Below are positions 15,460 through 46,500 of a stretch of DNA of 64,000 bases, piece by piece (position 1 is the first letter of the stretch; each line of letters opens with the position of its first letter). The position numbers and the translations under genes were made by a program. The notes below the pieces were generated by a model. The model had not been told where the DNA came from. It ran no database searches and saw only the letters and a program-made list of their open reading frames with translations. The stretch comes from Phallusia mammillata (lineage: Eukaryota), in NCBI GenBank assembly GCA_965637545.1, contig OZ281494.1, positions 17,856,001-17,920,000 on the forward strand, given 5' to 3'.

Positions 15460-26749
<11,290 letters not shown>

Positions 26750-28572: not shown

Positions 28573-31500
28573 TGACTTTTCACAAAAGCGTTGCCATACA
28601 AACAAGAATATTTGGCGCAAAAAGTCTGCTGTGAACGGGAGGTTTTCAAGACAACTAATACCAAATACTAATGGAACTGTCTTTCAAATGTCAGTGTTTT
28701 TATAAAAGATCGTTTTTATTGCTTGTTTTATTACTGGACCGTTCCAGACACAAGAAGTGGTATTTTGTATGCAAACACTTAAAACCATTCCAAATCTGTT
28801 CTGGAAATTGAAACCCGACTATGAAACATTCCACGCCTTTTTGACAACGACCAGCGTCAGGGCGACAGTTTTGAATTAAAATTAACTGGAATGTTTGCAT
28901 AGGCGTGTCCGACTTGAGCTACATTGAATCTCAATCATATAGGTCACAAAATGCCTACGCACCATACACACAAAGCAAGCATATTCGGGAATTTACTAAT
29001 CTGTTTTTTATTATCACTTACTTTCATAAAGGTATTTCAGCAATGGTAGCTATTTTTATTGTGGGATTTTTGTTTTGACTCATCTTGGCGCGCCTGACTT
29101 GAACAGCCAGATTTGGAAACCTACCCTTCATTCCTAGTCCTGCTGCCATAAATAGGCACCAGACCCTGATGTATCTCGGTTCATCGCATCATGCCAATCA
29201 ACGGAAGCACGTTTGATAAACAGGGCACTGTTACGTCACAACGAAAGGGGTGCCTACTTTTCTTATGTTTCAGAGTCCCCAAGTGACTTGTCGCTTCGAC
29301 CCCACTTGTCGCTAATTGTTGTTGGCACAATTGATTTTAATAAGTCATACGCGTTTGTTGCACGCCGGCTACTATGTGCACCCAGATTGACCTGGGCGTC
29401 TTGCCCAACTGATTCTGAAATATTCTGTAGGCTTTAGCTTTTACTAAACGTGTCATCAAAATAGAGGGGCATTTGAAAATGCAGCGCTTTACGTTTTTGC
29501 ACAAACGAAAGTAAATGTGTTAACTAAGTAGCCTATATTAGGTGTTAGCATACTCGTGACCCCTAACCTATACATTTGCCTTATGAAAGCACGCACATCC
29601 TCCCAACTACAAGGTACATTGTTGCAAAGGAGGAACGAACCCAGCTATTGTCCATCGAGCAAAAGGACGGTTTAAAGTTGTGCTTTTATGCCACATAAAT
29701 GTTGAGTTATCAAGGTTTGTTATTTCAAACATGGTATTCGTGACATTCATGAACTTTATTAGCTGCAAGGCACCTCAACAGAAAAATCACTTTTACCAAG
29801 TTTTTGATCTCATTAGTCTTTTGATAAAATTATGGTAAAATGAGTTCATTAAACAGGCTTTTGTGTGGCTGTGTGGCGCCAAGATGCTTACAGTGTTGCA
29901 TCTGCATGTGATAAGCCAATAGAGGAGAGCATGATGGAAATATTTGCTGTTTAGGATGCGTGCGCATCGCTATGCAAACAACAGTGAACATGATCACACT
30001 GTCTCATTACACAACTTTCACCGACTGCCCACGTCAGACGACACCTTATCAAGTCCCGAACGACGCGACTGGCTTGAGAATGACATCGAAATATGCGCAC
30101 TAAACTACACAGTCGTTCCTCTTTGCACTTGAAACGAAAGTTTTTGTGTTTTATGTTTGCATTAAAGAGAAACGCGTCGGTGATGCGCTGTGCAAACTGG
30201 TTGACTCACATTAGAACCGCCACCCAGTTTGAGACGCGCCACTGCCGTACTTTTTGTCGGAAATATCTGACTGGGCAGAAGGCGTCGCGGCGTGAACCCT
30301 TGGTTGCGAGACGAAGCTCCCGGAAATCGTCTGCAACAATCCAATGCCGCCGAAATAATTACCACTGTAAAGAGTGCTTCCTTCAACCATATAATGTTTA
30401 TGTCTATCACGTTTAATGCCAGCATCTTTCTAAAAGCTTTACTGCATTAAGTTGGAAGATAATTTTTGGGAGCTTTTGAAGGGTTTTGCACAACCGATAT
30501 AAAACACGAGCCACAACAAGTTGGGATCATTGATCGTATTTACATGCACAGCGTAGATGCGTTGAATTTCAAAATGAGATTGTCTGTAGCGAAGAAATTG
30601 TTACTGATTCCCTTTGCATTTGTTGCTTGAAATCTGCGAAAATATTCCTTTCTTCCTGAGTCATGTCCGGAGGAAAGTACACAGGAAGCATTCGACGCTT
30701 TACGGAAGCCACATCCATATGATCAGCAGCATGGCAAAACTTCCGGCAACCAACAAGCACAGGGTATTTTACAATAGAGCACAAAGGGACGAATCACCAA
30801 ACAGGTGTCAATTTTCGCTGACGGAAGCGGTGCAAGTCTTTGTTTTGTAGGGTTAGGCCGACGCCTTGCCACCGGTTATTGCTGCGTTCGTCTTGGATCC
30901 GAGCGTTCATTAACACTGACAAGTGGCTGCCGCCTAATCACGTTTGAGGCGCTCCCAACGACGATTTGCTTACTTTTCCACGCCAAACTGTGAGAAGATT
31001 ACCACTGGCGTATCAAGCTTGAGATCAATTGCCTTCCCATTGACGTCTTTCGAGCTGATGCGTCGAAATTAACTGTAATTTCAGGCGGCCACAGAACAAG
31101 ATTTCTACAATCGGTCCAGGCCTTCCTGCTTTCAAACACTGATCGAGGGAAATACTAATGGCATGCTGCATCGATGTTCAAGGCCATTTAAACCCGCAAT
31201 TTGCCATAAATTTTAAAACAGATTATTCTACCTAAAGCTCACCGGTCGTGTGGCAGCGACATTAATTAAGCTTAAAAGTTGTTACAGATCCGCACCTATT
31301 TAAATGAAATGAAATTTACAATTGTTGCACTATTTGTGTTTGCTAACCATGCCGCAAACTTACATATAAGGTAGTGTTGTGCAAAGCAAACCGAGTGGCG
31401 ATCACACAACTCAACATATCATCCATTTACGGTAGGCGCCGTATCGTACCAATGTTTACACGACGTCGTTGGTTGCTATAATCTTAAATCGACGGTACTT

Positions 31501-32055
31501 GTGTGAACACGAAGAGTACCGGGACAAATTTGGCCAAACCTTCGTCTTGCGCATTATAACCACGCGCACTACAGAGATGTTTGGAAAAACCGTAGATAGT
31601 TTCCATCGCAACATTTGTACCGTTTTAACTGGTTAAGCCAGGATGAGCACCCATCAGGATGCAATATACACCGCTGACTTATCGGCAAACTGTCAGTCAA
31701 GGTTAGTTTGATTAGAATCATTTGACAAAGTCACGAAATCGACTGTTTTTATTCCACAATGTTAACTGTGAGTTGGTAAAGTTTACCCTGCAAAGTTTAA
31801 ATTAAAACATGATGCGGAGGTTAAAACTTGGTTGTGTACTTTCGACAACTTTTCCAGTAGTTGCCTTTGTCTGAAGGGAAATATTGCAAATTGGGAGCTC
31901 GGCTTGGTACTCGTGTTTTTCCGACTCCCTTGTTCGCGAGCCAGTTCGCGAAACCTGACTATCACGCGTCCTAAAACTCCCCGACTGCTCCTCCACCGTA
32001 TTTCTTTATTGTGCGCGCTTTTTTCTGGTCTTGTTCTGTCTATGAGGCTCGGTGG

Positions 32056-32062
32056 TATAAAA
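32056..32062 (+). promoter_or_regulatory. TATA box of transcription unit A
   Basis: TATAAAA with an Inr-like TCACTCACAGT about 28-32 nt downstream. Confidence 0.6.
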
Positions 32063-32084
32063 CGTGGCGAGAACCAAAACATCA

Positions 32085-33185
32085 CTCACAGTCGAAGCGA
32101 AAAGCTGTTGGTTTATGTGAGATTGAGAACTGAAACTGTTCAAAACATGGATGTATACTTCAAACGAAAAAGCGTGGCGAAAGCACCGCCAAGAAGAGAT
32201 TGCAAGTACAAATGAAACATGGACTATATACACTTCATACAAATGTGAATTTTGAAGAAATTATGCATTTTCTAAGAAGAAACTAGAATGTCTAGTTGTA
32301 AGACTGACTGAAAGTGAAACGTGCAACTTGTTCACAACGAGGTCGCATTGTATATTACACTGATGATTTCTTGATAAAGACGAGGATTGCATCTAGCATG
32401 AGCTTTATCTCGAAACAGGCATGCGCAGAGAAACTTGCTCAGAACCTAAACGAGCAGCGCAGCAGCCTGCCTCAACGAAAACTAGTTGTTCACGATTTCG
32501 ACGTCTAGCCAGCCGCCATCGGGCCTACTATCTGCAAAGTAAAGCACTCAAGGATTCAGAAGACTGATGAGAGAACCCTGACTTTCGCAGATACGTTTGG
32601 CCAAGAATTCTGCCAAAAGAGGGACACTGTCCAGTAAAAGGCGCTGATGGAAATTGCTTTCAAGGTAAATTAAGTTTCATTACAGTTTTATTATCCATAA
32701 GGTTACCAATATTTATATAGTTGCAGTATTCATAAATAACAATAAACGAGCATAAATAACAATAACTTTTTTAGTGCAATGAAACTAATCATACTTTTAT
32801 CATTTTTAGAATTTTCAAAAACTTTCAACAACATCATTGACAACAATCGATACATTCTGATCACCGACAAAGCGTTTCTGACGCCTCACACCGAAACAAG
32901 CGCGAAGCAGTATCATATCATGGATTGGCACTGTAGCTGATGTAGTGAATATACAGCAGTCATTGTGCTACCACACGATCCTGTCTCGTGCCTACCATGT
33001 GACGTGATTATGCTCGTTAGGGCAAACATATCAAATCGACCGTTCATTTTTTATCAATGTAGTCTCAATAAGAAACGATTTTATTGTTTGTTTTTGTTGT
33101 TAATGTATTTGTATGTGTGTTTTACTCCGCCTTTGCTTTTGTTTTTCATGTTTTGTTGCAATAAATTGAAAAAGAGAGATTTTTG
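32085..33185 (+). ncRNA. Transcription unit A: spliced lncRNA or smORF transcript with a kink-turn hairpin
   Basis: TATA/Inr; intron 32665-32809 (AAG|GTAAAT, branch ACTAAT, TTTTTAG|); U/GU-rich 3' region and AATAAA at 33160; only short ORFs; homology blocks shared with unit B. Confidence 0.55.
32147..32940 (+). CDS. Alternative coding model for unit A: 87-aa unknown protein
   Basis: Exons 32147-32205, 32591-32664, 32810-32940 give MDVYFKRKSVAKAPPRRDCKYVWPRILPKEGHCPVKGADGNCFQEFSKTFNNIIDNNRYILITDKAFLTPHTETSAKQYHIMDWHCS. Good start context (AAACATGG), but the first donor is weak (GTACAA) and no homology is recognised. Confidence 0.3.
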
Positions 33186-36100
33186 TTTCGCTGATAAGAA
33201 AAGAAAATTAAACGCAAAGTTACAATATTACGGTGCCACACTTTAATTTGTAAGGAAGTCACGTTACAACGCTTTCAGTTGTGTTAGGGCTGAAGTTCAG
33301 AAGGTCTAGAGGGCGTATAAACAAACACTGGCAGAATGCTTCAATATGCTGTGCAAAGTAGGTAAACTTAAATAACCAGTAATTAACGTCGAGTAACGAC
33401 AAGCGGCTTAACAATTGAAGAAAGGTACAGTCGAGCAGACAAGAGTTTTCTACCGCCAGATCAATAAATATCTAAGTGTTGCCCAACAGTAAAACGGAAA
33501 TATTAGCTGTGGTTTGAGGTATCCGGACAGCGCTGGGTCACAATGGGCAAAGGAAACGCACCTAACAATTTCCTTGGCGCTACAAAGCCTGCTTGGCGGC
33601 AGTCGAGCGGCATTCAACCTTGACGCTTCCGTCCTGCCAAACCTGCGCGGACAGCATGTGCCACTTTGTCAACGTCGGCAGACGGAAAGCCACATCCGAG
33701 CCTTTGATTGTTTGCGCGGTGCGATGCTTGGCGCACTTTGGTCGTGACTGTAGTGTGAGATCGGACGTTCAACTATCGCCTTACCACAGCGATAGGAAGG
33801 GTTGGCTTTTCTCACATCAACTCACGGTGTGTAGGAGACTACTGCACACCGCCCAACGTGTGACTCACTGCAGAAAATCGCATAACCTGGAAGTCCAGTT
33901 TCACATTAAAGCATAGCGCGTAATCAGTGTTGCGAAACTGCGGAATTTCGTTTTTGTTGATTGTGATACATGTTGCACCGCGATGCTAAATTAGTGTTAC
34001 GTGTTGCACTTGGGACTCGAAAGTCACACTAGTGATTTATTGCGCAAATGTTCGTCAGGTCGACATTAGATAGGCAACTTAATAATTTAACATCTCATTT
34101 CTGTCCGATATGTTGGTGTTTCATTTGGTCTTGGCGGTGATAATTCTATTTTTGGCAGCGATGACTTATACAGCCTCGGGATTTTTTGTTTGAAAAATTT
34201 GGCACTACAGCCACGAAGTTAAATCTCACACGTGATTTTCAATAACGTGGTAATGAAATCGTTAGGTTATTTTGGTGCATATAATTTTCTGTATACAACC
34301 CAGTCCCTAATTGCTGCAGCAAACTGCGACCGCATTCGTCTTAACTGCGGCACGTTTCATCCCATTTGCGAACGCATATAGCAGTTCGAATCGTTATCGG
34401 CACTTTTCGTGGCACACACTAATCCTACGAGAAGGTGAACGCCTCTGCAAGGTCAGGCCTTAAGAAGGATGCAGCATCGGTTATAACAACACCCCAGGGC
34501 ACAGACCACCTCCAAGTTTGGGACGATCAGATCACGTACCCTCGCGAAGAAAACTATAAACTGTGTTTGCCCCCACCCTTTCTTCAAACGACGACCTGGT
34601 AAGTTGCCCTGGGTCGAAAAGGCTGTTTTTGTCTGCCAAGCTTAAAGTTCGTTTCTCAAAACCAATCAGGCAAACGAAAGCACAAAATTAGCATAAGCCG
34701 CCGGCAAGTGCGGATGTTAACGGCTGAATTCAAAATAACTTTCGCATCCAATTATCTAAGCGTCGACCTGGTAAAACCCAAACACCTCGAAAGGTGCTTG
34801 GTGCATATTTTTAATTACCAGGCAGTAACATGAATTGTTTATGTAGCCTAAAAGCCCAATGCGGTCAAGCTAAATACAGACACATGTCTATATTTTTAAT
34901 CTGGCATTTTGGGGTTCGACTGCTTTCATAGCTTAAAGAGTCTTTGGCCCTAACAGGCGTACAGACTTAAAAATAACGACTCGTAGTTTTCCCTCAACAC
35001 CAATCTAAAATTCCAGACTGTTTGAATGAAAGGAAGGCAATTTAAATTCAACCACTTCTCTTCCCGAGTGTCACCTTTCGCATCTTCTATTTACAAGCAA
35101 TCCTTTCCAACCGCAGACCACCGATCAGCCGTATGGCGGAGTGCATGCAAATCTCATGTTCCCGGCAGTTTGGCGCACCCAAACATTTGCCTGCCACGAC
35201 CCATAATCTCTAAGTGTCGATACGACGGACGAAAAAACTTTGCCACTGTCACGTTTTTTGGCCTCGCCCGATAAAAACTGGCCCATGCAAGGTGTGGCGA
35301 TTTGTGATTTTGTTATTGGGTTAGTCCATGCAAAATCACCGCCATAAAATAAGTTTGATACTTTTTAGACAAATAAAACCGGTTTAGGGTGCCATGTAAA
35401 TGCAAATGCCGTAAACAATATCAGACCGATTTTTTTGTCTACCTCGAAAATTCGAGATATTTCTGTTTGGTTACTCGTTTATGGTGTCACGAATGTAATC
35501 ATTTTTCTGTACTTTTTTGACAAATTATATTCATAACAAATAAAACTCAGCACGCTTTCTTGTACAGAAATTTATACATGTAATAATTGATCACTTAAAT
35601 CGGATCATAAAGTTGGGGATTTTTAGCAAATACGAAACATTAAAAATCTGCGTCAATACGTTCCAAAACCGGAGATTCTGCTTGTTGTTACGCGACTGGT
35701 TTGCGTGGAGGAGTCCGAAAGTAACCTTTTTTTAAGCGAAGCACGCAAATGTGCGCGTTGTGTCGGTTAATCCGCTTACTATTTAGATGCAGAGGCGTCT
35801 GCATAAGTTCATAATAACCCTCTCGTACAATTGTATAGAAAAATCTGTAGACACTGCTTGGCAGTAATGTTGTGGCAAAATTTTGTACTTTTCACAATAA
35901 CTTACATAATGTGTTGTAAAAAAAATCGCAGGTTGAAATTTGTAAATTAACGATGATTTTCTGCTCAGTTTCTAAATTAATCAATCACTATATTTTACAC
36001 GAATGCAAACCTTTACGTGTGGCATTATTATGATTCTCCTTGTCTAGAAACCGGTTTGATTTCGACATTAACTGCGGATTATCAGAAATGACACAAGCGT

Positions 36101-39100
36101 TCGATGCACGCTAAGGTCATACTTCGAGTCAAAAATACGATTTAAGCTGATTAACATATGACTTTGCTAAAATGATTTGCACGAGCGTGTGCAATGTTGC
36201 CCATGGCATTTTTTAATATTTTTACTGCCACATTTTTAAATTAAGATATGTCAGTCATAGAAATGATAAAACGCGGTTTAATTTCAAAGGCAAATTTGTC
36301 GCGGGAATCTTCAGGTAGAGACCAAACGCCGACGGCGCGCGTCAAACCAATGGCGCGTCACCTGAAAACATCAGTGAATACAAAGGCGCCGAGGCCGAAC
36401 GAAGCAACCATTGCCTGTGATCAAACGCAGTACAAGTAAAACGCCGCCCCGCTTTGATTCTCCCGCCGTGAGAGGGAACGGATGGGCTTTGTGAATCACA
36501 GAGTGAACTCTTCACTTCCCACGCCCCATCTTATGCTGTGGGTGGCAAGGTTGCAGCACAGTCACTGTCCTCGAAAGTCACACCTTCTTTCCCTCGCGAA
36601 CCGCGTTTAATCAAGGCCCTCCGTCGCGAGAAAAGTTTATTTTTGCCCAAATTAGTCGATATAAGTGGCAGCGTTCTTAAATTGTGGTTGGTTCGCTGCT
36701 TGAAGACGGCAATTGCTGCGATAGTTTTCTGTCTATTTTTGTGGCCAATTATCGATCAGATCAGCTTTTCACACACTGCGAGGTTTAGTATACGATCTGA
36801 AGACTATTTTGGGGTGGAGAATCTTTATTGCGATCAGTTATGGGTCAGCATTTTGTTGAGTTTGCCCGTAAATCCTTTTTGCAACCTCCGACGAATAAAG
36901 CAAAACGTTTTGTCAAAAATTTGCGCTGATTATTTTTTCAAGACTTAAATTGGGTGCAACAGGGTGTAGAATAGTGCAAACAAGGGACATCGAGCCCATA
37001 TTTTCGTCTGTTTGGCTCCGGTGCCACGTAACACCACTCCTGTTATATTTTCGTGAAGTCTATCACGTTTGAGCGCAATGCATCCATGCACGTGCCACAG
37101 CAAACCCACCATCAATTTCGCCTGGTGGCCGTCATGTCACCTCCGGCAACACAGCATAGATCCGCTGGCGGTCTTGTGACGATTTCCACACGCCCAACTC
37201 ACACCTTCCACCTCGCCTTCAAGCGGAAATCGGCGTGTCGCCTCGTTAAAACACAGCCCTTGAGGCGCGTGACTTTGTTGTCGGGTATGCCATATCAAAT
37301 TGCTACTGCCCGTTTATGGAGAGAAACACGACGACTTGGTTGCACTCTCTTTTTTGTAACATACCCAACCATCTTCCATTGTGAGTAACCACTACAGTGG
37401 CATCGTCTGGGTTTAAACAAGCGAAATGGAATGACTGGCAGGCGACGATTGAGACTCGTCTACATATTTTGAATCTGTGGGACCGCTTTGGCATTCTCAT
37501 AGGTTCCAGGTTAGACACCTGTCGCAGACGCAATTTACACGCTTCGTTTAAAGTTTCCCATGACTTGAACATGTTGACATCGGATGTTTCCTGACTATCA
37601 TAACATTTATGGTTGGTCGGTGGCGTGGGACGAATACAGGTGCTCCGCAGAATTCCAATCCCAAATCAAACATGCCTTAAGTAAAGCGTGTCAGTAAGTT
37701 TTCCCATGTAGCTATTTCTAAACAAGGTGCTGAGCCTGGTGGTCGTAAAATCCTTTTGGATTCCATATTTGGCGAAAGTGATTTTTCTTTTTTGATTTTT
37801 GGCAAAAGATTGAATACAAAACATCCAATAGGTTTAAAATTTGAGCACAAAAAATGCCAACGACCAATCAAAATAAAATGAAATATTCCTGCTGTTTTGG
37901 TTGTTTGGTTTCACAGATCGCAATTGTCGCTTTTGTCAGGATCCGACCTGTCAGGGTGTCAACTCAGTTCAACTTAGATATTACATTTTAATTCCAACAT
38001 TCTGAAAGCATAATGTTTTAGCCTAAACATATGTAACGCTGACTAGCAAACGACCGCACGTAGACAAGGCAGGGTAAACAACCGCCAAATGGCCGGAAGG
38101 GGCCAACGGACAGTGTTTACCTGAATGTTATTGCGACCTGTTCGTTTTTTACAATTGTCCTGAATTTAGACGAGGGAATTTTTGTTGCCACCCAATTTAG
38201 AGCTCAGGCACCGAGGAGCAAGAAGACTTGTTCGAACAATGGGACAAATAGGTCTTTAAGCGCCCGTGAAGTAGGCGACGACACTTTGTATCCAAGTGGC
38301 GCATGGCAACGTTTATTATCGGAAACCCTGGCGAGGTTGTTGTGATTTCAATGTGAAAAAGATTGGAGTGATGATTAACTTTTTCGCGGGCCGCGTGGAG
38401 CGCCAACGGGGAGCATCCTTTTTTGTTCAGTGGTTAACGGGGGCCATCAAAGCAATTCAGGCGCCGGGCCACAGGGGCGCGCGCAGCCAACGACCATTAC
38501 AACCGCCGGTTCAAAGAAACACGTCGAGCGCCAATAAATCGCTCGCTGGAATGGCAAAGACAAACATCAGCGGTGTTTTGCAGTGCCACTCGAACGCTGA
38601 ACGGTATCCGGAGTTCAAAGAAGCCTTGTTGAGCCCCTCATTTGTTGGTAACGGCGAACATGTGTTAGCGTTGTGTTTTTGTTCAACCTTGAGCAAACAG
38701 GAACGCTATGATCCGCCTGCTCGGGCAGGTAAATTCCTTTCAATTCCGACGAGGTGACTTTCAATAATCGTGTTTAGCTATGTGAACCACTTAACAAAAT
38801 TTGTGTTAGTTGTATTGCACGAGGTGAGCAGGCTTACCGCCTAGACTCGTAGAATTACTTTTTCCCAAAATAAGAAATAAGCTTTTCCATGACATTGTTA
38901 TGTTCGTGACGTCAATCGTTTCTCAACATAGCCAGTTATACGCACCTATCATATTTTAAATCAACATACAGTATTCATCGATCGAATTATTTATCAGCAT
39001 GTACACGAAACGACGTTTTTATATTCTGCACTAATCCAATAGTTCTAATGCTACAAATGACTGTAAAAACTCATTGAAGTTTATACCTGTAAAATTAGTG

Positions 39101-41239
39101 CACGCTTGCAAAAAGGAAAAACATAATGATCATGATTCAGTTCTGCTTAGTCGCCAGACATTTCTACAAATTTGCGTTTGCAGCATTAATTATTGTTGCG
39201 GTATTGAAAACAATCCACTTTCTGTAAAAGTAAAAAGTGATACTTTTCTTTCCAAAACAACTAAAAAGCAAGTGGGGAGCATAGGACCAGTCGATGAAAA
39301 CATGGAATAACCCTATGTTAAATTAATTGCGCTATGCACGTGATGGACAAAGTCTGCATCATATACCATCCATAATTTCATTTCATGCCCCAATATTGGG
39401 GGCATCCCTAAAAACACCACAGAAAACCATAACGCGTGATTGCACAACAGTTAGCCCAGAAGTTGTGCTACCGCAAGGGGTTTCACCCTTTTACTGTTAC
39501 ACAACACTTGCGACGTGTCTTTCGTGCTACTGTCAAGGTTTATAAATTCCCCGTCGGGTAAAAGTAAACTTGTGGGCAATAACAATAATAGCCTTCTCGA
39601 ATGTTCCACCAAGTCAGCAATTTTGAACAACAACAAAACTGCTGTGTCACCTTGTCGCCGGAAAGCCACGAGTTGATTTCAAGAGGCTCTGCCTTCTCTC
39701 TTTTTAACTCTGCGAAAGTGCGAATGTTTTAAAATACGTAGGAGTTATTATGATGCAACATCGCGCCATAACATGTAGGAATGCTTTTGCATTGTCGAAT
39801 TGGGACACGTTGTATTACGTTGGGTCGTTGCGAAAACAAGGATGAATTGCATTTTCGTGCATTGGGGTTGAAGTCAAGAACATTTTCTTTAGCAGGCAAA
39901 ATGCTTTTTTACGGACTGAACAGAAACAGCACATTTACTATTTCTATTAGACGCGTGGCATATCAAACAAGATACACATTGCGTCTAACCCCAATAGGCA
40001 ATTGTATTGATACATTTTGTTGACATGTTTAAACAACTGCGATCGATCATGTGGATTAATACCTCTTGCACGTGATCAGAGTGTTGCGCGTTATCAGTGA
40101 TGTGTGGCACCCATTACCTTTGTGATTCCCTGTAGTGTTTATTTGAATAATGGGGTCAGCAAATGGACTTTGGTTCATAAAGTGCATGAACCCATATAAT
40201 CAAACACATGTGGAGGTGTAACTGTGGGAGGCGTGATATTAGGCGTGACAACCAGCGAACTTGCTGAGGCCGTTGAATGAACTTTGTACCATGTAGCAAC
40301 CTATAACACGCGGCAATCCTTCCAACACGCGTAGAGACTTGAATCAATTGATTGCGACACCAATCTTGGTCGCTGACTGTTCGTTAGGACATATGTTGTT
40401 TTTCTCACATTTTCCAAAGCGTGGCAAAATAATTGGGCGAGCCCAGACACGCCCCTTCAGGTCAAAGACGGTTGGAAAGCTGTTGGCTTGAGTGACGTTT
40501 TGCACCAATGTGTTGCAACGTTACACAAAATAATTGGTGTCATGTTTCAGGTACAGACGTTGGTGCAACAAATCTAAGACATGCGAGAATGTTTCGGTCA
40601 AACCGTTTCAGGGATTTATCATCCAGAAATGCAGGGTTAAATTTGTACTGTTATTCGTTTATTACCGGGTCAAATTTTTTCTGCATCTACGCCAATTTGA
40701 TGTTTTTGCAACTGCTGCTGAACATATGTGTATCAGCACGAATTGCGCTTTCAAAAATGTTAATGAAGTTTGTTTCCACTGTACTTTCAATTTATTTCCG
40801 ACCGAAACTATTTCATTTGCAAGGATGTCCCAGCTTCTATTGTTTTTCAAGCGCAACGCAAATGGTATTCAGTAACAACAACTTAAATGTCACCACACGT
40901 GCTTACCATGGCATGGAAACACCAGGTCAGTGTACCCACAGAGCAACTGATTCGTAAAAAATGTGACCCCGCTTATAGGGTTGGGAAACTCAGACCCCAA
41001 TTACGAAAATAGCCTTGCGTTAAACACGCTCAGTCAATATTTGGCACATCGTGTCACTTACAATGCACCGTTTCTGTAATGGAATTTACCAAGTTACTTT
41101 TCTTAAGTATGTTTCATAAAATTGTTTGCCTAATTTAGTAGAGTAAGTGTTTGCTTGTAAATTGGTATTAAGCCTTTCTCTCCACCACGTCAAATTTAAT
41201 CAGTGTTTAATCCTGCCTGAGTGTGAAAACAATAAACAA

Positions 41240-42495
41240 TGTACATTTTCACCCAATGTTTTATTTCACCACAACACAAAAACATATAACCATGTAAATA
41301 TTGGTTTGTTTGTGAACTTGGTTTAAAAAGGAATACAGGGTACAAGGCACATTACGAACGAAATATTGCGCTTTAAAAGAGACACAATAACACAAAAATT
41401 TGCGAAAATACGCAGTTGTCGAGTAAACGTTATACACGTAATGATCAAACATAGTGTTGTAAATCGTTCAATACACGAAGGACACAAGCATTCACACATG
41501 CATGTGCGTCATAGAACGATTACAACGTCACTTGACAAGATTTGGCTGATTTTCACTTGTTTCTTCTGATGCTCACGCGGGGATAATTCACCCGGATGTG
41601 ACGATACAAGCTAGTTTCGCCGTTTGCTATCTACAAGAGAAAACAAAATTTCGGTCAATTACATTTCAAGTCACACAATACAACCAAATATGTTTTGTAA
41701 AATCAAATCGAAAGCGATTTATAGTCACTTATCACTGGTGCATATGACGAAAAAACACATAAAAACACAAACAATTTGATTAAAAGTACAACTTACAGCG
41801 TTTTGGCGATTTGTTGTTTGTACAGGATCACATCTTGAAATGTAGAGAATGTCGCAGAACTTGTTTTTTTGTTTTGTTTATATATACAGCCGCAAGTGAA
41901 GCTCCTCTCATCAGCATGTTGAATCCCAGAGGTACACTTTGCGAGTCAATAAACAGTTTGTGAGCAAGTTCTTTTGCTTTTTGCTCTTTGAAAGAGTTCA
42001 AAACTAGCAGTCGTGTCGACAGGCTGATGCTTGTCTTTTTTGTTGCAATTTTTTTCTTGTTTTTTCCATAAAGGTCTTTTTTTGGTGCATCAGTCCCCTT
42101 GCAAACGCTCGTGCATGGTAGCATTCCCTGCACTTGTTCGGGGAACCAACTTGGCAAAACCAAGCCTGGTCTCCGACACGACGCTGCTAGTAGATGTAGC
42201 TACGCTGCTACGAAGCATTGTTCGATATTGTCTTTTGTTTTTTGAAGTTTTGCCACTGTGGATGATACAGCTTGACTTCTTGCAAACATATACAGTCCAA
42301 AATTCAGAGATAGGTAAGTAAATTCGTTCTTCCTCCAAGCCAGTAAATCTTCGAGAATCCAGACCAGCTCGGTCCAGAATCACTGCCAGTGGAGGCCCAT
42401 GACGACGAATTTTTTAAGGTTTTTTAAACACTAAAAAAACCAACAACTGTACACTAACAGCACACACTATACAGCACGCCGTTCTTACAGAGAAT
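41240..42495 (-). ncRNA. Transcription unit B: spliced lncRNA or smORF transcript, apparent paralogue of A
   Basis: TATAAAA at 42526-42520; Inr CTCATTC with its A at 42495; intron 41796-41631 (GTAAGT ... TTTTCTCTTGTAG); AATAAA at 41265-41260 followed by a GU-rich tract; same kink-turn hairpin as A. Confidence 0.55.
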
Positions 42496-42519
42496 GAGGT
42501 GACGCAACCGCGCTAGCGC

Positions 42520-42526
42520 TTTTATA
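42520..42526 (-). promoter_or_regulatory. TATA box of transcription unit B
   Basis: TATAAAA 31 nt upstream of a consensus Inr. Confidence 0.65.
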
Positions 42527-43540
42527 CGAGCCAGTTGCGATAGCAAACAGTCACGGGACATGTACCTTATAAGGCGATCACGTGTTTCGGCGTATTGCGC
42601 AACACAACGGAAAATCATTGTGATTCGCCTTTGTGAGGGTTGGGCTTGTCCAAAGGTTGTTGCGAAGGGTGTGTAGGATCGGCATGTTTCGAATTCTTTT
42701 CTGTGAAAATGTTTAATGAACCAAAGACAACAACATTCACGAGGCAAATATCACTTTTTTACCCATAAACTGCATTTTATGTATCATTTAGGTTGCTATG
42801 AATATTAGTGACATCCTTACAACCTGACTTAGACTCCGTTTATTTTGCGTAAATTACTTTTTAGCCGTCTTAACTTTGGCAAACGAATATGTTTTGCTGT
42901 TGTGAATTGTGAAGTGACATAGGGCCGGGTTTGTTTTGGAGGCGTCACTCCGAACACGCCTCCAGCGATGACGCATCGGGAATCCCCGTCACTTTCACTG
43001 GCGCGCGGAATTTTTGGTGAAACGTTTTCGATTCGTAAGTCTTGTGATGAAGAAGCTGCAATACGTACGAAAATTAGTGGAATTCAGAGCGTGATATCCC
43101 TGCCATTAGGCTTGCCAACTTGCCACAGGCAATTTTCACGACTGCAGAATTTTTAGCGCACCCGCAGCTGGAACTGAACATATAGTGACGTGTAAGTTGT
43201 GACGTCAGGGGAAGGCGGACCTTATTGACTGGGCATTACTAATTGATGAGTCGTTTTTTGTTCGAACATTCCTTTGTTAACTCGGTGTACAAAATTAGCA
43301 ACATGTCGGGACATTATTTGATCTCCCGTACGTACGGTATTGCGAATCAAGTTTTTTTAATCTTTTTCAACATTGCTTTGTCACTGGAAAATTGATGATT
43401 CAAATGTATACAATAAAAGAAGTCATGGTGGATTGTTTTTTAATTATACCAACTTTTTTTCTAGTCGAAAGCACTTGGTGACTTGGTAAAAAAATAATGT
43501 ATTTGCCAATCACATAACCTCAAGCCATTTTGCCACTGTC

Positions 43541-46500
43541 ATGGATTACACTGAAGAACAAAAACAAGAGTTTGAGGCACTTTCTGCCATTTTGATGGAT
43601 GATTTTGTCGGTGTGTGGAATAGAATATGTTGTAGTGAAAAGTGTGATAAACTATGTTTAAAAACTAATCTTTGTGACAGCTTCTTATTCAAGGATGTTT
43701 TTGGATCCTAATATAGCAAGTGCTTTAATACTACATGGGAATTTTACACTTAACCAATAAAGTTGTTTTCACTTCACAGACCTCGCCACCACTCCAATGT
43801 CATGCATGATTACCTTAAGTGGTATTGTGACAGAATCAAACACTACTTTCCACCTAAAAATCACATTGCCAGACAATTACCCTGATGCAATACCTTATGT
43901 TGATATTCCCATCAGGGGCCATTCTCACCACAATAGTCTGAAAGTAAACTTAATTCAACATTTAAATGACAAGGTAATTTGTGGTACAGACTTAAATTTG
44001 TTTATGAATATGTGTAAGATTACTTACACTCAGACCCACTTTAATGTTGTGGACTACTACAGTTTTTTATTTGGTTGAGTTCTAATGCTGATGTTTATTA
44101 TTAAAACTGGAATTTAAGTGTTTTTAATGTGAACAGTTTCTTTAGGCCCAAGAAAACCTTGGATCCCCATCTTTATACACTTTGGTTGAAGAGGCCAAAA
44201 GCTGGCTAGCTGAACATTTGCATGATTACAATACACAACAGAAAAACATAATTGAAGTGGAACAAAAGCAATCAATTGATGAAACAGTGAAGTTAGAAGA
44301 TGGTGGTCAAACTGAATCTGAAGGAAAATGGGATTTTGTCATTGGTCTTGTGGTAAATATTGCTTCTAATCATCACTTGTAGCAAACTAAAGTACAATGT
44401 ACCAAGGTGATATGTATAAATTCAATGTTTTTATGAGTTTAGAAAACGATTCATAAATGCTACCTAAATATCATTTTTGCTATTTAGTTTTGTTATTCTT
44501 ACATCTTATTTAGGGCAAGCCATCAGCTGGAAAAAGCACTTTTTTCAATGCCGCAACAAAATTCCCCAAAGCAAAGGTTGGAATTCATCCATTTACTACA
44601 ATAGAGCCAAACTTTTCACAAGCATTCTACTCAATACCTGACCCCACCAACAACAGAGGAATTGTCTCTGAACCTGGTAATTGTTTTTGTAATAAACTCT
44701 TATGGAAGTGCCATTTTTTAAATTTAAATTATCCATGTATAATGTGTGTTTGTGTGTTGAATTAGACCCAATACATCAATACAGGTTGTGTATTCAGTGT
44801 AGGTTTAATAGTGGCTCATTTCATTTATTTTAAGTATGGATATCTTTCTGCACCTACCATCTTTTATCACATAATTCAAAATTTTGTAGACACAATGTTT
44901 TAACTGAAAGTATTTTCATTGATTGAAATATTGTAATATTAATTCATCCAAATACAGTGTAAATGATCAACAGAATAGTTGTCAAAGACCCACACTTCTC
45001 CTCATGACATCACATTCTTGTGGTGAAAAGCAAAACCTGAGTCATTATGCTTATGGCCTTAAGGAATATCATCAGGTGAACTATGTACCTCAGTGAAACT
45101 GTGTGGCAATCAACCACTGGCTTGCCTGTGAAATTCTGAACCCAAGTAAAACATATTTACCATTGCAGCTTATGGAAAACACCATGATGGCCTGCGGTAT
45201 ATTCCAGTGATTTTGAAGGACGTTGCGGGGCTGGTACCAGGTGCGTCCGACGGGAAGGGCCGAGGAAATCGGTGTGTAAATACTTTACCAAGATATTTTT
45301 ATCGATTTGGAGCATTTTGGTTTGCAGATTTATTGTCTTATCGTGTCTGAGTGGCCTATTGATTTTTGTGGAGCTGGTGACTTACGCAGATGGTTTGGTG
45401 CGTCACTAACTGACGTATCCCTCCGTATGGGGGTGTAATATCAGTCGCGTATATGCTAAAACTCGTTTAAAAAACAGCGATAGCAAATGCTTTTTTGGGG
45501 GATATTTGCAGCATAAACGTCAGTAGTCCTCAAACTGTTTGTTTTTCAACAAGCGATTGCTATTGTGGGTGTTGGAATATGTACCTAACACACTCTATTA
45601 ACCACATTTTTAACAAACGTTTATGGCTGCTAAGGTTGTCCTTGACTGTGCATCCATTTCGGGAAATCTATTTCACAAATACCATACAACAATCCATCTG
45701 TTTGAATTGATCGATCGTCTCTTTCCAAAACTAATGATCATAAAATTTACACACTTTTGATGTAGATACCAGATGAATTGGGTTAGGAATTTCATAGGTC
45801 ATTTTTCCCCAACAGATAAGGCTACAAGCGTTCATGCTAAGTACAAAAAGAAATCTTTAATGCCTATGCGATAGAATGAACAAGGCCTTTTTTATTTTGC
45901 ATTTGTTGCCAAATCGTGGTGTCGACCTTACAATTAGGGTTCATATCCCAAAATATATTCCGGATTGGGGAAATGATTGCGCTTCAAAGTAACGGATATG
46001 TTGCATTTAGGACTCGTCCGTTTTTAATGTGGTAACGGATGTCTTTCCTCTGACGCTATCTATGCGTTAACTTTCCGAAAGAGCGGACCATTTATGACGC
46101 AACGAAAACTCCCTAAGTTTCTCAATAAAACATGGTTCGCATTTGTGCTGTACTGTAGGTTCATTACCCCTAATGGTAATATATGGTGACGACCTATGTT
46201 AATTCTTATGCAATCGCGTGTTATTCACACCCATATGCCTTGCGATGAGCAATGTCACACCAGGGCGAGCCGTTCTCTCGTGCGAGGCGTGACGTAACAT
46301 GTACCGCGTCACGATTTTTTCCAGTTCTGACAGTCGAACATCCAAAGCACAATACTTGTAAATTTGGGACTTTTTATCATCACCTGTACTGGACCACAGA
46401 AAAATTTACGGCGATATCTTTGTGGAGAAAAGTTTAGCCGAAGTCATGTGCCTCTTGAATCCATTGGAGAAAGTTTCACTAGATTGCGGTTTTATCACAC

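What the first reader, a model, noticed from the sequence alone, without database searches (positions are those of the whole stretch)
32056..42526. Convergent pair of paralogous TATA-driven, one-intron transcripts with no shared long ORF: candidate new structured-lncRNA family
Seen: units A (+, about 32085-33185) and B (-, about 42495-41240) have the same layout of TATAAAA, Inr about 30 nt later, a 0.6-0.7-kb first exon, one short intron (145 and 166 nt), a U-rich last exon and AATAAA. Three collinear blocks are shared: TGAATTTTG..TATG..TTT..AAGAAG (A about 32246-32279; B about 42305-42275), AACTTGCTCA.AA.CT (A about 32432; B about 41971) and a 55-59-nt hairpin ending 74 and 93 nt before the donor. 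The blocks are not held in a common reading frame. Inference: an old duplication whose conservation lies at the RNA level, sitting in a 17-kb interval with no other recognisable gene.
Basis: partly seen in the sequence, partly recalled or inferred. Interest (0 to 1): 0.8.

Follow-up and report, generated by a model that had tools for sequence, protein, structure and literature searches.

The report
Two sea-squirt lncRNAs sharing a kink-turn hairpin
Two neighbouring, facing genes in the sea squirt Phallusia mammillata make short spliced RNAs with no credible protein; the only thing they still share is a ~140-base stretch whose best-kept part can fold into a kink-turn hairpin, a likely protein-docking site that remains untested.

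Summary

**Unit B (minus strand).** RNA-derived contigs from three studies remove exactly 41631-41796. One contig ends at 42495 joined to a template-switch adaptor. That puts the cap site on the Inr A, 31 nt after TATAAAA.

**Unit A.** Support is indirect. The same RNA runs hold 0.66-0.73 of its sampled words, against 0.70 expected for the spliced model. My one read-laying run went to B.

**Origin and coding.** Both units are single copy, so they are not a transposon family. No ORF is shared, has a Pfam match or has a homologue.

**Paralogy.** It is real but narrow.
- Strict local alignment is no better than shuffles.
- nhmmer makes A and B reciprocal best hits in the window (E about 5e-4).
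- Promoters, introns and last exons show nothing.

**Hairpin.** Each unit has a K-turn-compatible hairpin. These are the only two strict matches in 128 kb of sequence (both strands).
- Paired and G.A/U.U positions are kept or compensated.
- Other unpaired positions are at random identity.
- Structure tests on two sequences give only p of about 0.04-0.06.

**Verdict.** This is a lineage-restricted pair of lncRNAs with a probable structured module. Its function and any protein partner are untested.

The parts
32056..32062 (+). TATAAAA box of unit A. The predicted start is at about 32084-32088, in TCACTCAC.
   Evidence: Read directly from the sequence. The TSS was not verified by reads.
32085..32664 (+). 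Unit A exon 1 (model). The donor is CAAG|GTAAAT.
   Evidence: RNA-derived runs hold 0.66-0.73 of the words of 32000-33300, against 0.705 expected for the spliced model. Sequence read.
32459..32503 (+).
   Evidence: nhmmer alignment with high posterior probability. Block X to hairpin start: z 5.9, 0/1000 shuffles. The core pattern is exact only in A and B genome-wide. alifold finds no structure signal here.
32522..32602 (+). Extended stem-loop of A, 81 nt: basal helix GGCC/GGCC, outer stem CUGC-AAAGU/ACUUU-C-GCAG, inner K-turn hairpin.
   Evidence: MFE -26 kcal/mol over 93 nt, z -2.4, 3/200 shuffles. RNAalifold consensus.
32547..32573 (+). K-turn-compatible hairpin of A: CUC | AAG | GA | U | UCAG - AAGA - CUGA | U | GA | GAG.
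   Evidence: Strict descriptor hit, one of only two in 128 kb of sequence (both strands). Sequence read.
32665..32809 (+). Predicted intron of A, 145 nt, GT..AG.
   Evidence: The splice motifs are in the sequence. The word share fits its removal. It was not seen directly.
32810..33185 (+). Unit A last exon (model). It is U-rich, with AATAAA at 33160-33165.
   Evidence: The poly(A) site is not verified.
41240..41630 (-). Unit B last exon. Contigs cover 41630 down to 41346. AATAAA lies at 41265-41260.
   Evidence: table 8. The 3' end beyond 41346 is not covered.
41631..41796 (-). Intron of B, 166 nt, removed in RNA.
   Evidence: A joint from 41630 to 41797, ends CT..AC on the + strand, in X1, X2 and X15, which come from three studies.
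41797..42495 (-). Unit B exon 1. The cap site is at 42495.
   Evidence: The X2 contig ends at 42495 followed by the reverse complement of a template-switch oligo. The Inr TCA(+1)TTC is read.
41876..41954 (-). Extended stem-loop of B, 79 nt: basal helix GUUU/AAAC, outer stem, inner K-turn hairpin.
   Evidence: MFE -20.3 kcal/mol over 91 nt, z -1.6. Four pairs are compensated relative to A.
41904..41932 (-). K-turn-compatible hairpin of B: CCUC | UGG | GA | U | UCA - ACAUGC - UGA | U | GA | GAGG.
   Evidence: Strict descriptor hit at 41931-41905. Sequence read.
41986..42030 (-). Block X in B.
42520..42526 (-). TATAAAA box of unit B; its first T (42526) lies 31 nt upstream of the mapped cap site.

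Best explanation
**What it is.** A and B are two single-copy RNA polymerase II genes of Phallusia mammillata. They lie tail to tail, 8 kb apart. Each makes a roughly 1-kb TATA/Inr-initiated, once-spliced transcript that most likely encodes no protein. The cap site is shown for B only; a poly(A) tail is inferred from the AATAAA signals.

**Origin.** They descend from an old inverted duplication. Almost everything has diverged to randomness except a ~140-nt module in exon 1. The module is a block with no predicted structure (X), followed 20-30 nt later by an ~80-nt stem-loop.

**Proposed mechanism.** The inner part of the stem-loop has every sequence feature of a simple kink-turn:
- a C stem,
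- a 3-nt bulge,
- tandem G.A/A.G pairs,
- a U.U pair,
- a short NC stem capped by a small loop.

I propose that the module is the working part. The K-turn docks an L7Ae-family protein (SNU13/15.5K is the obvious candidate), and block X offers a single-stranded platform beside it. The two RNAs would then be partly redundant carriers of one ribonucleoprotein module.

**Shown and inferred.**
- Shown: B's cap site, splicing and expression; A's expression; single-copy status; homology of the module.
- Inferred: common descent of the whole units, RNA-level selection, K-turn folding, the protein partner and any function.
For: **Transcription**
- B is spliced at 41631-41796 in three studies, and its 5' end at 42495 abuts a template-switch adaptor.
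- A's word share in those RNA runs is 0.66-0.73, against 0.705 expected.

**Not repeats**
- A, B and the spacer are single copy.
- The hairpin covariance model finds only A and B.
- The block X pattern is exact only in A and B.

**Homology**
- nhmmer gives reciprocal best hits with E 4.5e-4 and 6e-4; the next hits have E 2.8-3.3.
- Exon 1 against exon 1 scores 277 against real-sequence nulls of 155+/-24 and 138+/-24, with 0 of 740 reaching it.
- Block X taken alone gives z 5.9.

**Structure**
- A strict K-turn-hairpin descriptor hits only these two sites in 128 kb of sequence (both strands), both on the transcribed strand. Shuffles give 1.25 hits, or 0.15 when a U.U pair is required.
- RNAalifold recovers the same architecture without being told. 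All 18 pairs are kept, 4 of them by changes on both sides.
- Paired columns are 27/36 identical and all 9 changes keep pairing.
- The non-Watson-Crick core is 7/7 identical. Other unpaired columns are 11/38 identical, which is about random.

**Non-coding**
- The longest ORFs are 48 and 98 aa, behind 10 and 3 upstream ATGs.
- There is no Pfam match.
- None of the 8 ATG-start ORFs looked up is in the protein collection as an exact sequence, and B's longest ORF has no homologue.
Against: - There are only two sequences. The structure controls are weak: covariation 29/500, alifold column shuffle 19/500, single folds z -2.4 and -1.6.
- The structure was derived from the same two sequences that it is tested on.
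- The K-turn core is identical in sequence in both copies, so it shows no covariation. A conserved linear motif would look the same.
- With +2/-3 scoring the A/B local alignment is within the shuffle range.
- Scaled to the whole genome, the nhmmer E-value would be about 1.
- The bulge ends in G, not the U that I recall from U4 and box C/D sites bound by 15.5K (recalled, not checked here).
- No Rfam family matches.
- A's ends and intron, both poly(A) sites, and conservation in other species are all untested.
Confidence: 0.5

Rival explanations
1. A and B are real but functionless or fast-evolving transcripts, and the shared module is neutral residue. On this reading they are either by-products, B arising from the bidirectional promoter it shares with the RWD-GTPase gene, or decaying duplicates. 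The ~140-nt similarity would be leftover from a duplication, or partly chance. The K-turn-like fold would be a coincidence that the reader noticed after the fact.
For: - B's cap site lies about 295 bp from the first exon of the divergent RWD-GTPase gene.
- Strict local alignment is no better than shuffles.
- The structure tests reach only p of about 0.04-0.06.
- K-turn-compatible hairpins arise by chance about once per 100 kb.
- No Rfam match and no third copy.
Against: - Unpaired positions are at random identity (11/38). All 43 paired or G.A/U.U positions are identical or compensated.
- The single best-kept block is also the only K-turn descriptor hit in each 1-kb transcript.
- Both units keep their own TATA box. 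B also keeps a mapped Inr start and a working intron. Both are expressed in three or four studies.
Confidence: 0.27
2. One or both units are small-protein genes. Candidates are B's 98-aa lysine-rich ORF (42124-41828) or one of the short upstream ORFs. The shared module would then be a UTR or coding-region regulatory element, and the K-turn a translational control site.
For: - B has a 98-aa ATG ORF that ends 31 nt before the donor.
- In block X, the longest stop-to-stop frames of A (64 aa) and B (111 aa) line up in the same register, with 6 of 14 residues identical (and my own reading).
Against: - A's counterpart ORF stops before the hairpin, while B's runs through it in a shifted frame.
- Differences in block X show no excess at third codon positions (read by eye).
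- There are 10 upstream ATGs in A and 3 in B.
- No Pfam match and no homologue among 5.8 billion proteins of 0.55-1.75 times the query length.
Confidence: 0.13
3. The conserved module acts as DNA, for example as an intragenic enhancer or a cluster of factor-binding sites kept in both copies. On this reading the RNA fold is irrelevant.
For: The best-kept stretches (GGATTCA, CTGATGAGAG, CAGCCTG, CTAGTT) are short exact words such as binding sites would give.
Against: - Four pairs in the basal helices changed on both sides while keeping complementarity.
- The apical loop and bulge vary while both strands of each stem are kept. A DNA-level reading does not predict this.
Confidence: 0.07

Closest known systems
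Simple kink-turn stem-loops bound by L7Ae-family proteins (U4 snRNA 5' stem-loop, box C/D and U3 B/C motifs)
   Same: The order of parts matches: a Watson-Crick C stem with C-G next to the bulge, a 3-nt bulge, tandem G.A/A.G pairs, U.U at 3b.3n as in box C/D K-turns, then a short NC stem closed by a 4-6 nt loop as in the U4 5' stem-loop (family features from my own knowledge).
   Different: The hairpin sits inside exon 1 of a ~1-kb spliced RNA with poly(A) signals, not in a small stable RNA. The third bulge position is G, not U. Unit B has no D box, there is no terminal box C/D stem, there are no U4/U6 pairing regions, and no Rfam family matches. Protein binding is untested.
Drosophila roX1/roX2 lncRNAs (own knowledge)
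   Same: These too are two lncRNAs with almost no sequence similarity that share only short conserved boxes within stem-loops. Those boxes are the protein-binding, functionally redundant part.
   Different: There is no homology to them. roX RNAs act in dosage compensation through MLE and MSL2, and nothing links A or B to that. The A/B module is a K-turn-type hairpin near the end of exon 1, not roX boxes near the 3' end.
K-turn autoregulatory sites in messenger precursors (yeast RPL30 transcript, archaeal L7Ae 5' UTR; own knowledge)
   Same: A K-turn lies in a polymerase II or messenger-type transcript, upstream of a 5' splice site, and could be read by an L7Ae-family protein.
   Different: In those cases the transcript encodes the binding protein itself, and the RPL30 K-turn includes the splice site. 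A and B encode no such protein, and their hairpins end 74 and 93 nt before the donor.

Membership tests
Kink-turn (simple, hairpin-capped) | Watson-Crick C helix ending in a C-G or G-C pair next to the bulge | tested here: met
   A has CUC/GAG and B has CCUC/GAGG, with C-G adjacent to the bulge.
Kink-turn (simple, hairpin-capped) | Three-nucleotide bulge followed by tandem G.A and A.G pairs (GA on both strands) | tested here: met
   A has bulge AAG then GA, B has bulge UGG then GA, and the opposite strand reads U-GA-GAG(G) in both. A descriptor that requires these features hits only these two sites in 128 kb of sequence (both strands). The test is of sequence compatibility only.
Kink-turn (simple, hairpin-capped) | NC helix that starts with a non-Watson-Crick 3b.3n pair | tested here: met
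   Both have U.U, followed by UCAG/CUGA in A and UCA/UGA in B.
Kink-turn (simple, hairpin-capped) | Kinked three-dimensional geometry, and binding by an L7Ae-family protein that depends on the G.A pairs | not testable with these tools
   This needs gel-shift, FRET, crystal or CLIP experiments.
Box C/D snoRNA | C box RUGAUGA near the 5' end and D box CUGA near the 3' end, joined by a terminal stem, in a 70-120 nt RNA | tested here: not met
   CUGAUGA is present in both. B has no CUGA downstream of it in exon 1, and A's nearest CUGA is only 7 nt away. No Rfam C/D family matches either unit at E up to 10 over 30000-45000.
SECIS element | AUGA on the 5' strand, GA on the 3' strand, a long helix II and AA in the apical loop | tested here: not met
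   The 5' strand reads AGGA or GGGA, not AUGA. The stem above the G.A pairs is only 3-4 bp with a 4-6 nt loop. No SECIS hit in Rfam.
Hammerhead ribozyme | CUGANGA and GAAA cores with three helices around a UH cleavage site | tested here: not met
   Only the CUGAUGA word is present. There is no GAAA core in register and no Rfam hit.
Long non-coding RNA gene (polymerase II) | A defined capped start and splicing | tested here: met
   Met for B: a template-switch junction at 42495 and removal of 41631-41796 in three studies. Only indirect for A.
Long non-coding RNA gene (polymerase II) | No conserved or recognisable open reading frame | tested here: met
   The longest ATG ORFs are 48 and 98 aa. 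No Pfam match. No shared frame. No homologue for B's longest ORF. Ribosome profiling was not available.
Long non-coding RNA gene (polymerase II) | Polyadenylated 3' end | not tested
   AATAAA lies at 33160 in A and at 41265 in B. The contigs stop about 100 nt short in B.
Dispersed repeat or transposon | Many copies in the genome | tested here: not met
   Each unit and the spacer match only themselves. Searches with the covariance model and with patterns find no further copy of the module.

The most novel reading that the evidence does not exclude
The most novel reading is a chordate lncRNA pair whose only selected feature is a free-standing K-turn stem-loop with an adjacent single-stranded platform. 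The hairpin would recruit SNU13 or another L7Ae-family protein onto a spliced polymerase II transcript with poly(A) signals. It could act as a sensor, decoy or chaperone for snRNP or snoRNP assembly factors in embryos. That would be a K-turn ribonucleoprotein class outside snRNAs, snoRNAs, rRNA, SECIS elements and autoregulated ribosomal-protein messages.
Probability: 0.2. Interest if true: 0.7.

Novelty: new member of a known kind. Interest (0 to 1): 0.5.

Why it matters
Few ascidian lncRNAs have any proposed working part. Here the comparison of two old paralogues points to one ~80-nt stem-loop and a neighbouring block as the only constrained sequence. That gives a small, directly testable target for gel shifts with SNU13, for CLIP, and for deletion in Phallusia embryos, which are an established imaging and injection system.

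If the K-turn is real, it would add spliced polymerase II lncRNAs to the known carriers of this protein-docking motif. If it is not, the pair is still a well-mapped example of divergent and convergent lncRNA genes. For B the cap site and the intron are verified to the nucleotide.

Tried and rejected
**Similarity methods that found nothing**
- Strict Smith-Waterman (+2/-3) of whole units gives 29 against 25.3+/-2.6 for shuffles, which is not significant.
- blastn and frame-by-frame blastp find nothing convincing.

**Known RNA families**
- Rfam over 30000-45000 at E up to 10 gives only a chance snoR12-like hit outside the units.
- Box C/D snoRNA, SECIS, hammerhead, pre-miRNA and telomerase RNA were considered and rejected.
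- For telomerase RNA, the longest telomere-template word is 6 nt in A and there is none in B.

**Further copies in the genome**
- Pattern GGATTCA N3-12 CTGATGAGAG gives two extra hits. One lies in a carbonyl-reductase-like coding exon, and neither can form the K-turn.
- A looser pattern hits only repeat families, and those have no Rfam match.
- Covariance model R1 finds only A and B.

**ORF look-ups**
- Exact look-up of 8 ORFs finds none in the protein collection.
- Pfam is negative, and the homologue search for B's ORF is empty.

**Synteny route to other species**
- An RWD exon searched against 1.84 billion representatives returned only the species' own protein and a spurious bacterial giant protein.
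- The full protein has its nearest listed relatives in amphioxus at 47% identity, with no closer ascidian in the list. Its gene is not on record for fetching flanks.
- Cross-species conservation therefore could not be tested.

**Literature**
- Three paper searches returned no title or abstract describing such RNAs; none of the papers was opened.

**Handling of the spliced models**
- They were joined only inside a script, to list ORFs.
Every search used single-exon references.

Full report
**Setting.** The window is G000:C1:17856001-17920000 of a 240-Mb sea-squirt assembly. A protein that is 100% identical to an exon of the neighbouring gene is named in UniRef as Obg-like ATPase 1 of Phallusia mammillata. 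KAT5 lies on the + strand. Its MOZ_SAS exons are at about 18.9-20.7 kb and its last coding exon ends at 26749. The RWD-Obg-like GTPase gene starts on the + strand with a non-coding exon at about 42790-43191. Units A (+) and B (-) lie between these genes, tail to tail.

- I laid four small-contig runs from four studies on 39000-44900.
- Three of them (X1, X2, X15) carry contigs over 41346-42495 that skip exactly 41631-41796. The ends read CT..AC on the + strand, which is GT..AG for a minus-strand RNA.
- The same runs show the spliced exons of the GTPase gene and nothing over 39000-41166, so they are RNA-derived.
- The X2 contig ends at 42495 and continues with 21 letters. Their reverse complement ends in ...GCAGAGTACGGG, which I recognise from my own knowledge as the 3' end of a SMART-type template-switch oligo.
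- The RNA 5' end is therefore the A of TCATTCT, 31 nt downstream of the T of TATAAAA at 42526-42520. No spliced leader is attached.
- B's start lies about 295 bp from the first exon of the divergent GTPase gene.
- The 3' end is not confirmed, because contigs stop at 41346-41418.

**Is A a real transcript?** My one read-laying run went to B, so the evidence for A is indirect.
- The runs that one search shows to be RNA hold 0.66-0.73 of the sampled 31-mers of 32000-33300. The probable DNA runs hold 0.93-1.00.
- A is therefore expressed in at least four studies and is probably spliced as proposed. Its ends and intron were not seen.
- Run X9 holds A but shows no B contig, so the two are not always co-expressed.

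**Are they repeats?** No.
- A, B and the 7.9-kb spacer match only themselves in the genome.
- The hairpin pattern has two further genomic hits. One is in a coding exon, and neither can form the K-turn.
- A covariance model of the hairpin finds only A and B.
- The spaced core of block X is exact only in A and B. Its 2-mismatch hits are at control level.

**Are A and B homologous?**
- With stringent scoring the best local alignment, which is the hairpin, scores 29 against 25.3+/-2.6 for dinucleotide shuffles. That is not significant. blastn and per-frame blastp add nothing.
- Sensitive methods give a different answer. With +5/-4 scoring, the whole units score 409 against 283+/-36 for shuffles that keep local composition, with 2 of 1000 reaching it.
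- That signal is confined to exon 1. The part upstream of the hairpin gives 0 of 1000. The introns give z -0.6, the last exons z 0.4, and the stretch from hairpin to donor z 0.9.
- Against real sequence from the same window, exon 1 against exon 1 scores 277. The nulls are 155+/-24 and 138+/-24, with a maximum of 227, and 0 of 740 reach the observed score.
- nhmmer is an independent statistic. It makes B 42030-41889 the best non-self hit of A's exon 1 in the 128 kb searched (both strands), with E 4.5e-4 against a next-best of 2.8. The reverse search gives E 6e-4.
- The nhmmer alignment has two confident blocks. Block X is A 32459-32503 against B 42030-41986. The other block is the hairpin.
- Block X taken alone gives z 5.9.
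- The 370-460 nt upstream of block X are not significant (z 1.45). Block 2 is out of order relative to block X.
- Promoters and downstream flanks show nothing.
- So common descent is well supported for a ~140-nt module. For the whole units it is inferred from adjacency, orientation and layout.

**Is the module an RNA structure?**
- Read directly, both hairpins fit a simple kink-turn. A reads CUC | AAG | GA | U | UCAG - AAGA - CUGA | U | GA | GAG at 32547-32573. B reads CCUC | UGG | GA | U | UCA - ACAUGC - UGA | U | GA | GAGG at 41932-41904.
- A strict descriptor hits exactly these two places in both strands of the window, both on the transcribed strand. The descriptor requires 3 Watson-Crick C-stem pairs, a 3-nt bulge, GA on both strands, 3 Watson-Crick NC pairs and a loop of 3-8 nt. 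Shuffles give 1.25 hits, or 0.15 when U.U is required.
- The two hits are not independent if A and B are homologous. The point is that the best-kept block of each transcript is also its only K-turn candidate.
- RNAalifold, given 155-165 nt from each copy and no hint, returns the same C and NC stems and the outer stem. It also returns two basal helices in which four pairs changed on both sides, for example GGCC/GGCC in A against GUUU/AAAC in B.
- Over the 81 columns of the element, paired columns are 27/36 identical and all nine changes keep pairing. The non-Watson-Crick core is 7/7 identical. Other unpaired columns are 11/38 identical, which is about random.
- The controls are modest, as expected for two sequences. 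Partner shuffles reach the observed covariation in 29 of 500 trials. Slid partners pair in 31-43% of cells against 100% observed.
- Column-shuffled alignments fold as well in 19 of 500 trials, and the block X side shows no structure signal.
- Single-sequence folds of the extended element give z -2.4 for A and z -1.6 for B. The short versions were unremarkable.
- No Rfam family matches.

**Coding potential.**
- In the spliced models, which were joined only inside a script, the longest ATG ORFs are 48 aa in A and 98 aa in B. They lie behind 10 and 3 upstream ATGs.
- None has a credible Pfam match.
- None of the 8 ATG-start ORFs looked up is in the protein collection as an exact sequence.
- B's longest frame has no homologue.
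- In block X the longest frames of A and B do line up, with 6 of 14 residues identical. However, A's frame stops before the hairpin and B's crosses it in a shifted register. Differences show no third-position excess by eye.
- The other long ORFs of the interval have no Pfam match.

**Interpretation.**
- The most economical reading is an old inverted duplication of a small lncRNA gene in which only one module stays under constraint.
- I propose that the stem-loop is a K-turn docking site for an L7Ae-family protein, with block X as an adjacent single-stranded platform.
- The alternatives are neutral residue in functionless transcripts, small-protein genes, or a DNA-level element. None is excluded.
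- The decisive test is orthologues in related ascidians. It could not be run because no ascidian genome other than this one is reachable with these tools.

**Earlier notes.** The scan's own notes on this window (s1-546546, s1-546555) flagged the two hairpins as kink-turns. I re-derived this independently and found the claimed covariation to lie in the basal helices, not in the K-turn itself.

Noticed in passing
window 42790-44676 (+): The RWD-Obg-like GTPase gene has a non-coding first exon at about 42790-43191 and an intron at 43192-43464; one contig retains or extends through that intron. It shares a ~295-bp bidirectional promoter region with B. Its RWD + MMR_HSR1 + YGR210-like architecture (PF05773, PF01926, PF08438) is not a sea-squirt novelty. 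Full-length relatives at 40-47% identity occur in amphioxus, bivalves, gastropods, an annelid and a nemertean; longer forms occur in chytrids and protists. No closer ascidian orthologue was listed.
   Followed up: partly
G000:C5:7858742-7879707 (L009 holds 7867000-7870000): A tandem array repeats GATTCAAYTGCAATGATACTGATGAG every 0.5-2 kb on the minus strand. It has no Rfam match. It is probably a satellite or a gene array of unknown nature.
   Followed up: partly
G000:C3:8435959, C3:16356110, C3:16986529, C5:13062026, C5:15295059 (L010): A dispersed repeat carries GATTCAGACGAGCGCTGATGAG, with 6 copies seen. A second dispersed repeat carries GATTCAAAATTCTGATGAG, with 4 copies. Despite the CUGAUGAG word, neither has a hammerhead or any other Rfam match.
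   Followed up: partly
window 32000-33300 versus 41346-42495: Run X9 (study P3) holds 0.55 of unit A's words but has no contig on unit B. Runs X1, X2 and X15 carry both units. A and B therefore seem to be expressed in partly different samples.
   Followed up: no
window 42007 and 42228: Run X15 differs from the assembly at two places in B's exon 1, G>A and T>C on the + strand. The first falls on a position of block X that is conserved between A and B. No difference was seen in the hairpin in the three runs laid.
   Followed up: no
window 32824-33113 (+) versus 42716-42444 (-): nhmmer finds a weak, non-collinear similarity (E 0.032) between A's last exon and B's promoter and 5' end. It is probably a compositional effect of GT-rich sequence.
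   Followed up: no
window 30580-30664 (+): A sub-threshold snoR12-like box C/D match: 22.5 bits against a gathering score of 39, E 3. I take it for chance.
   Followed up: no
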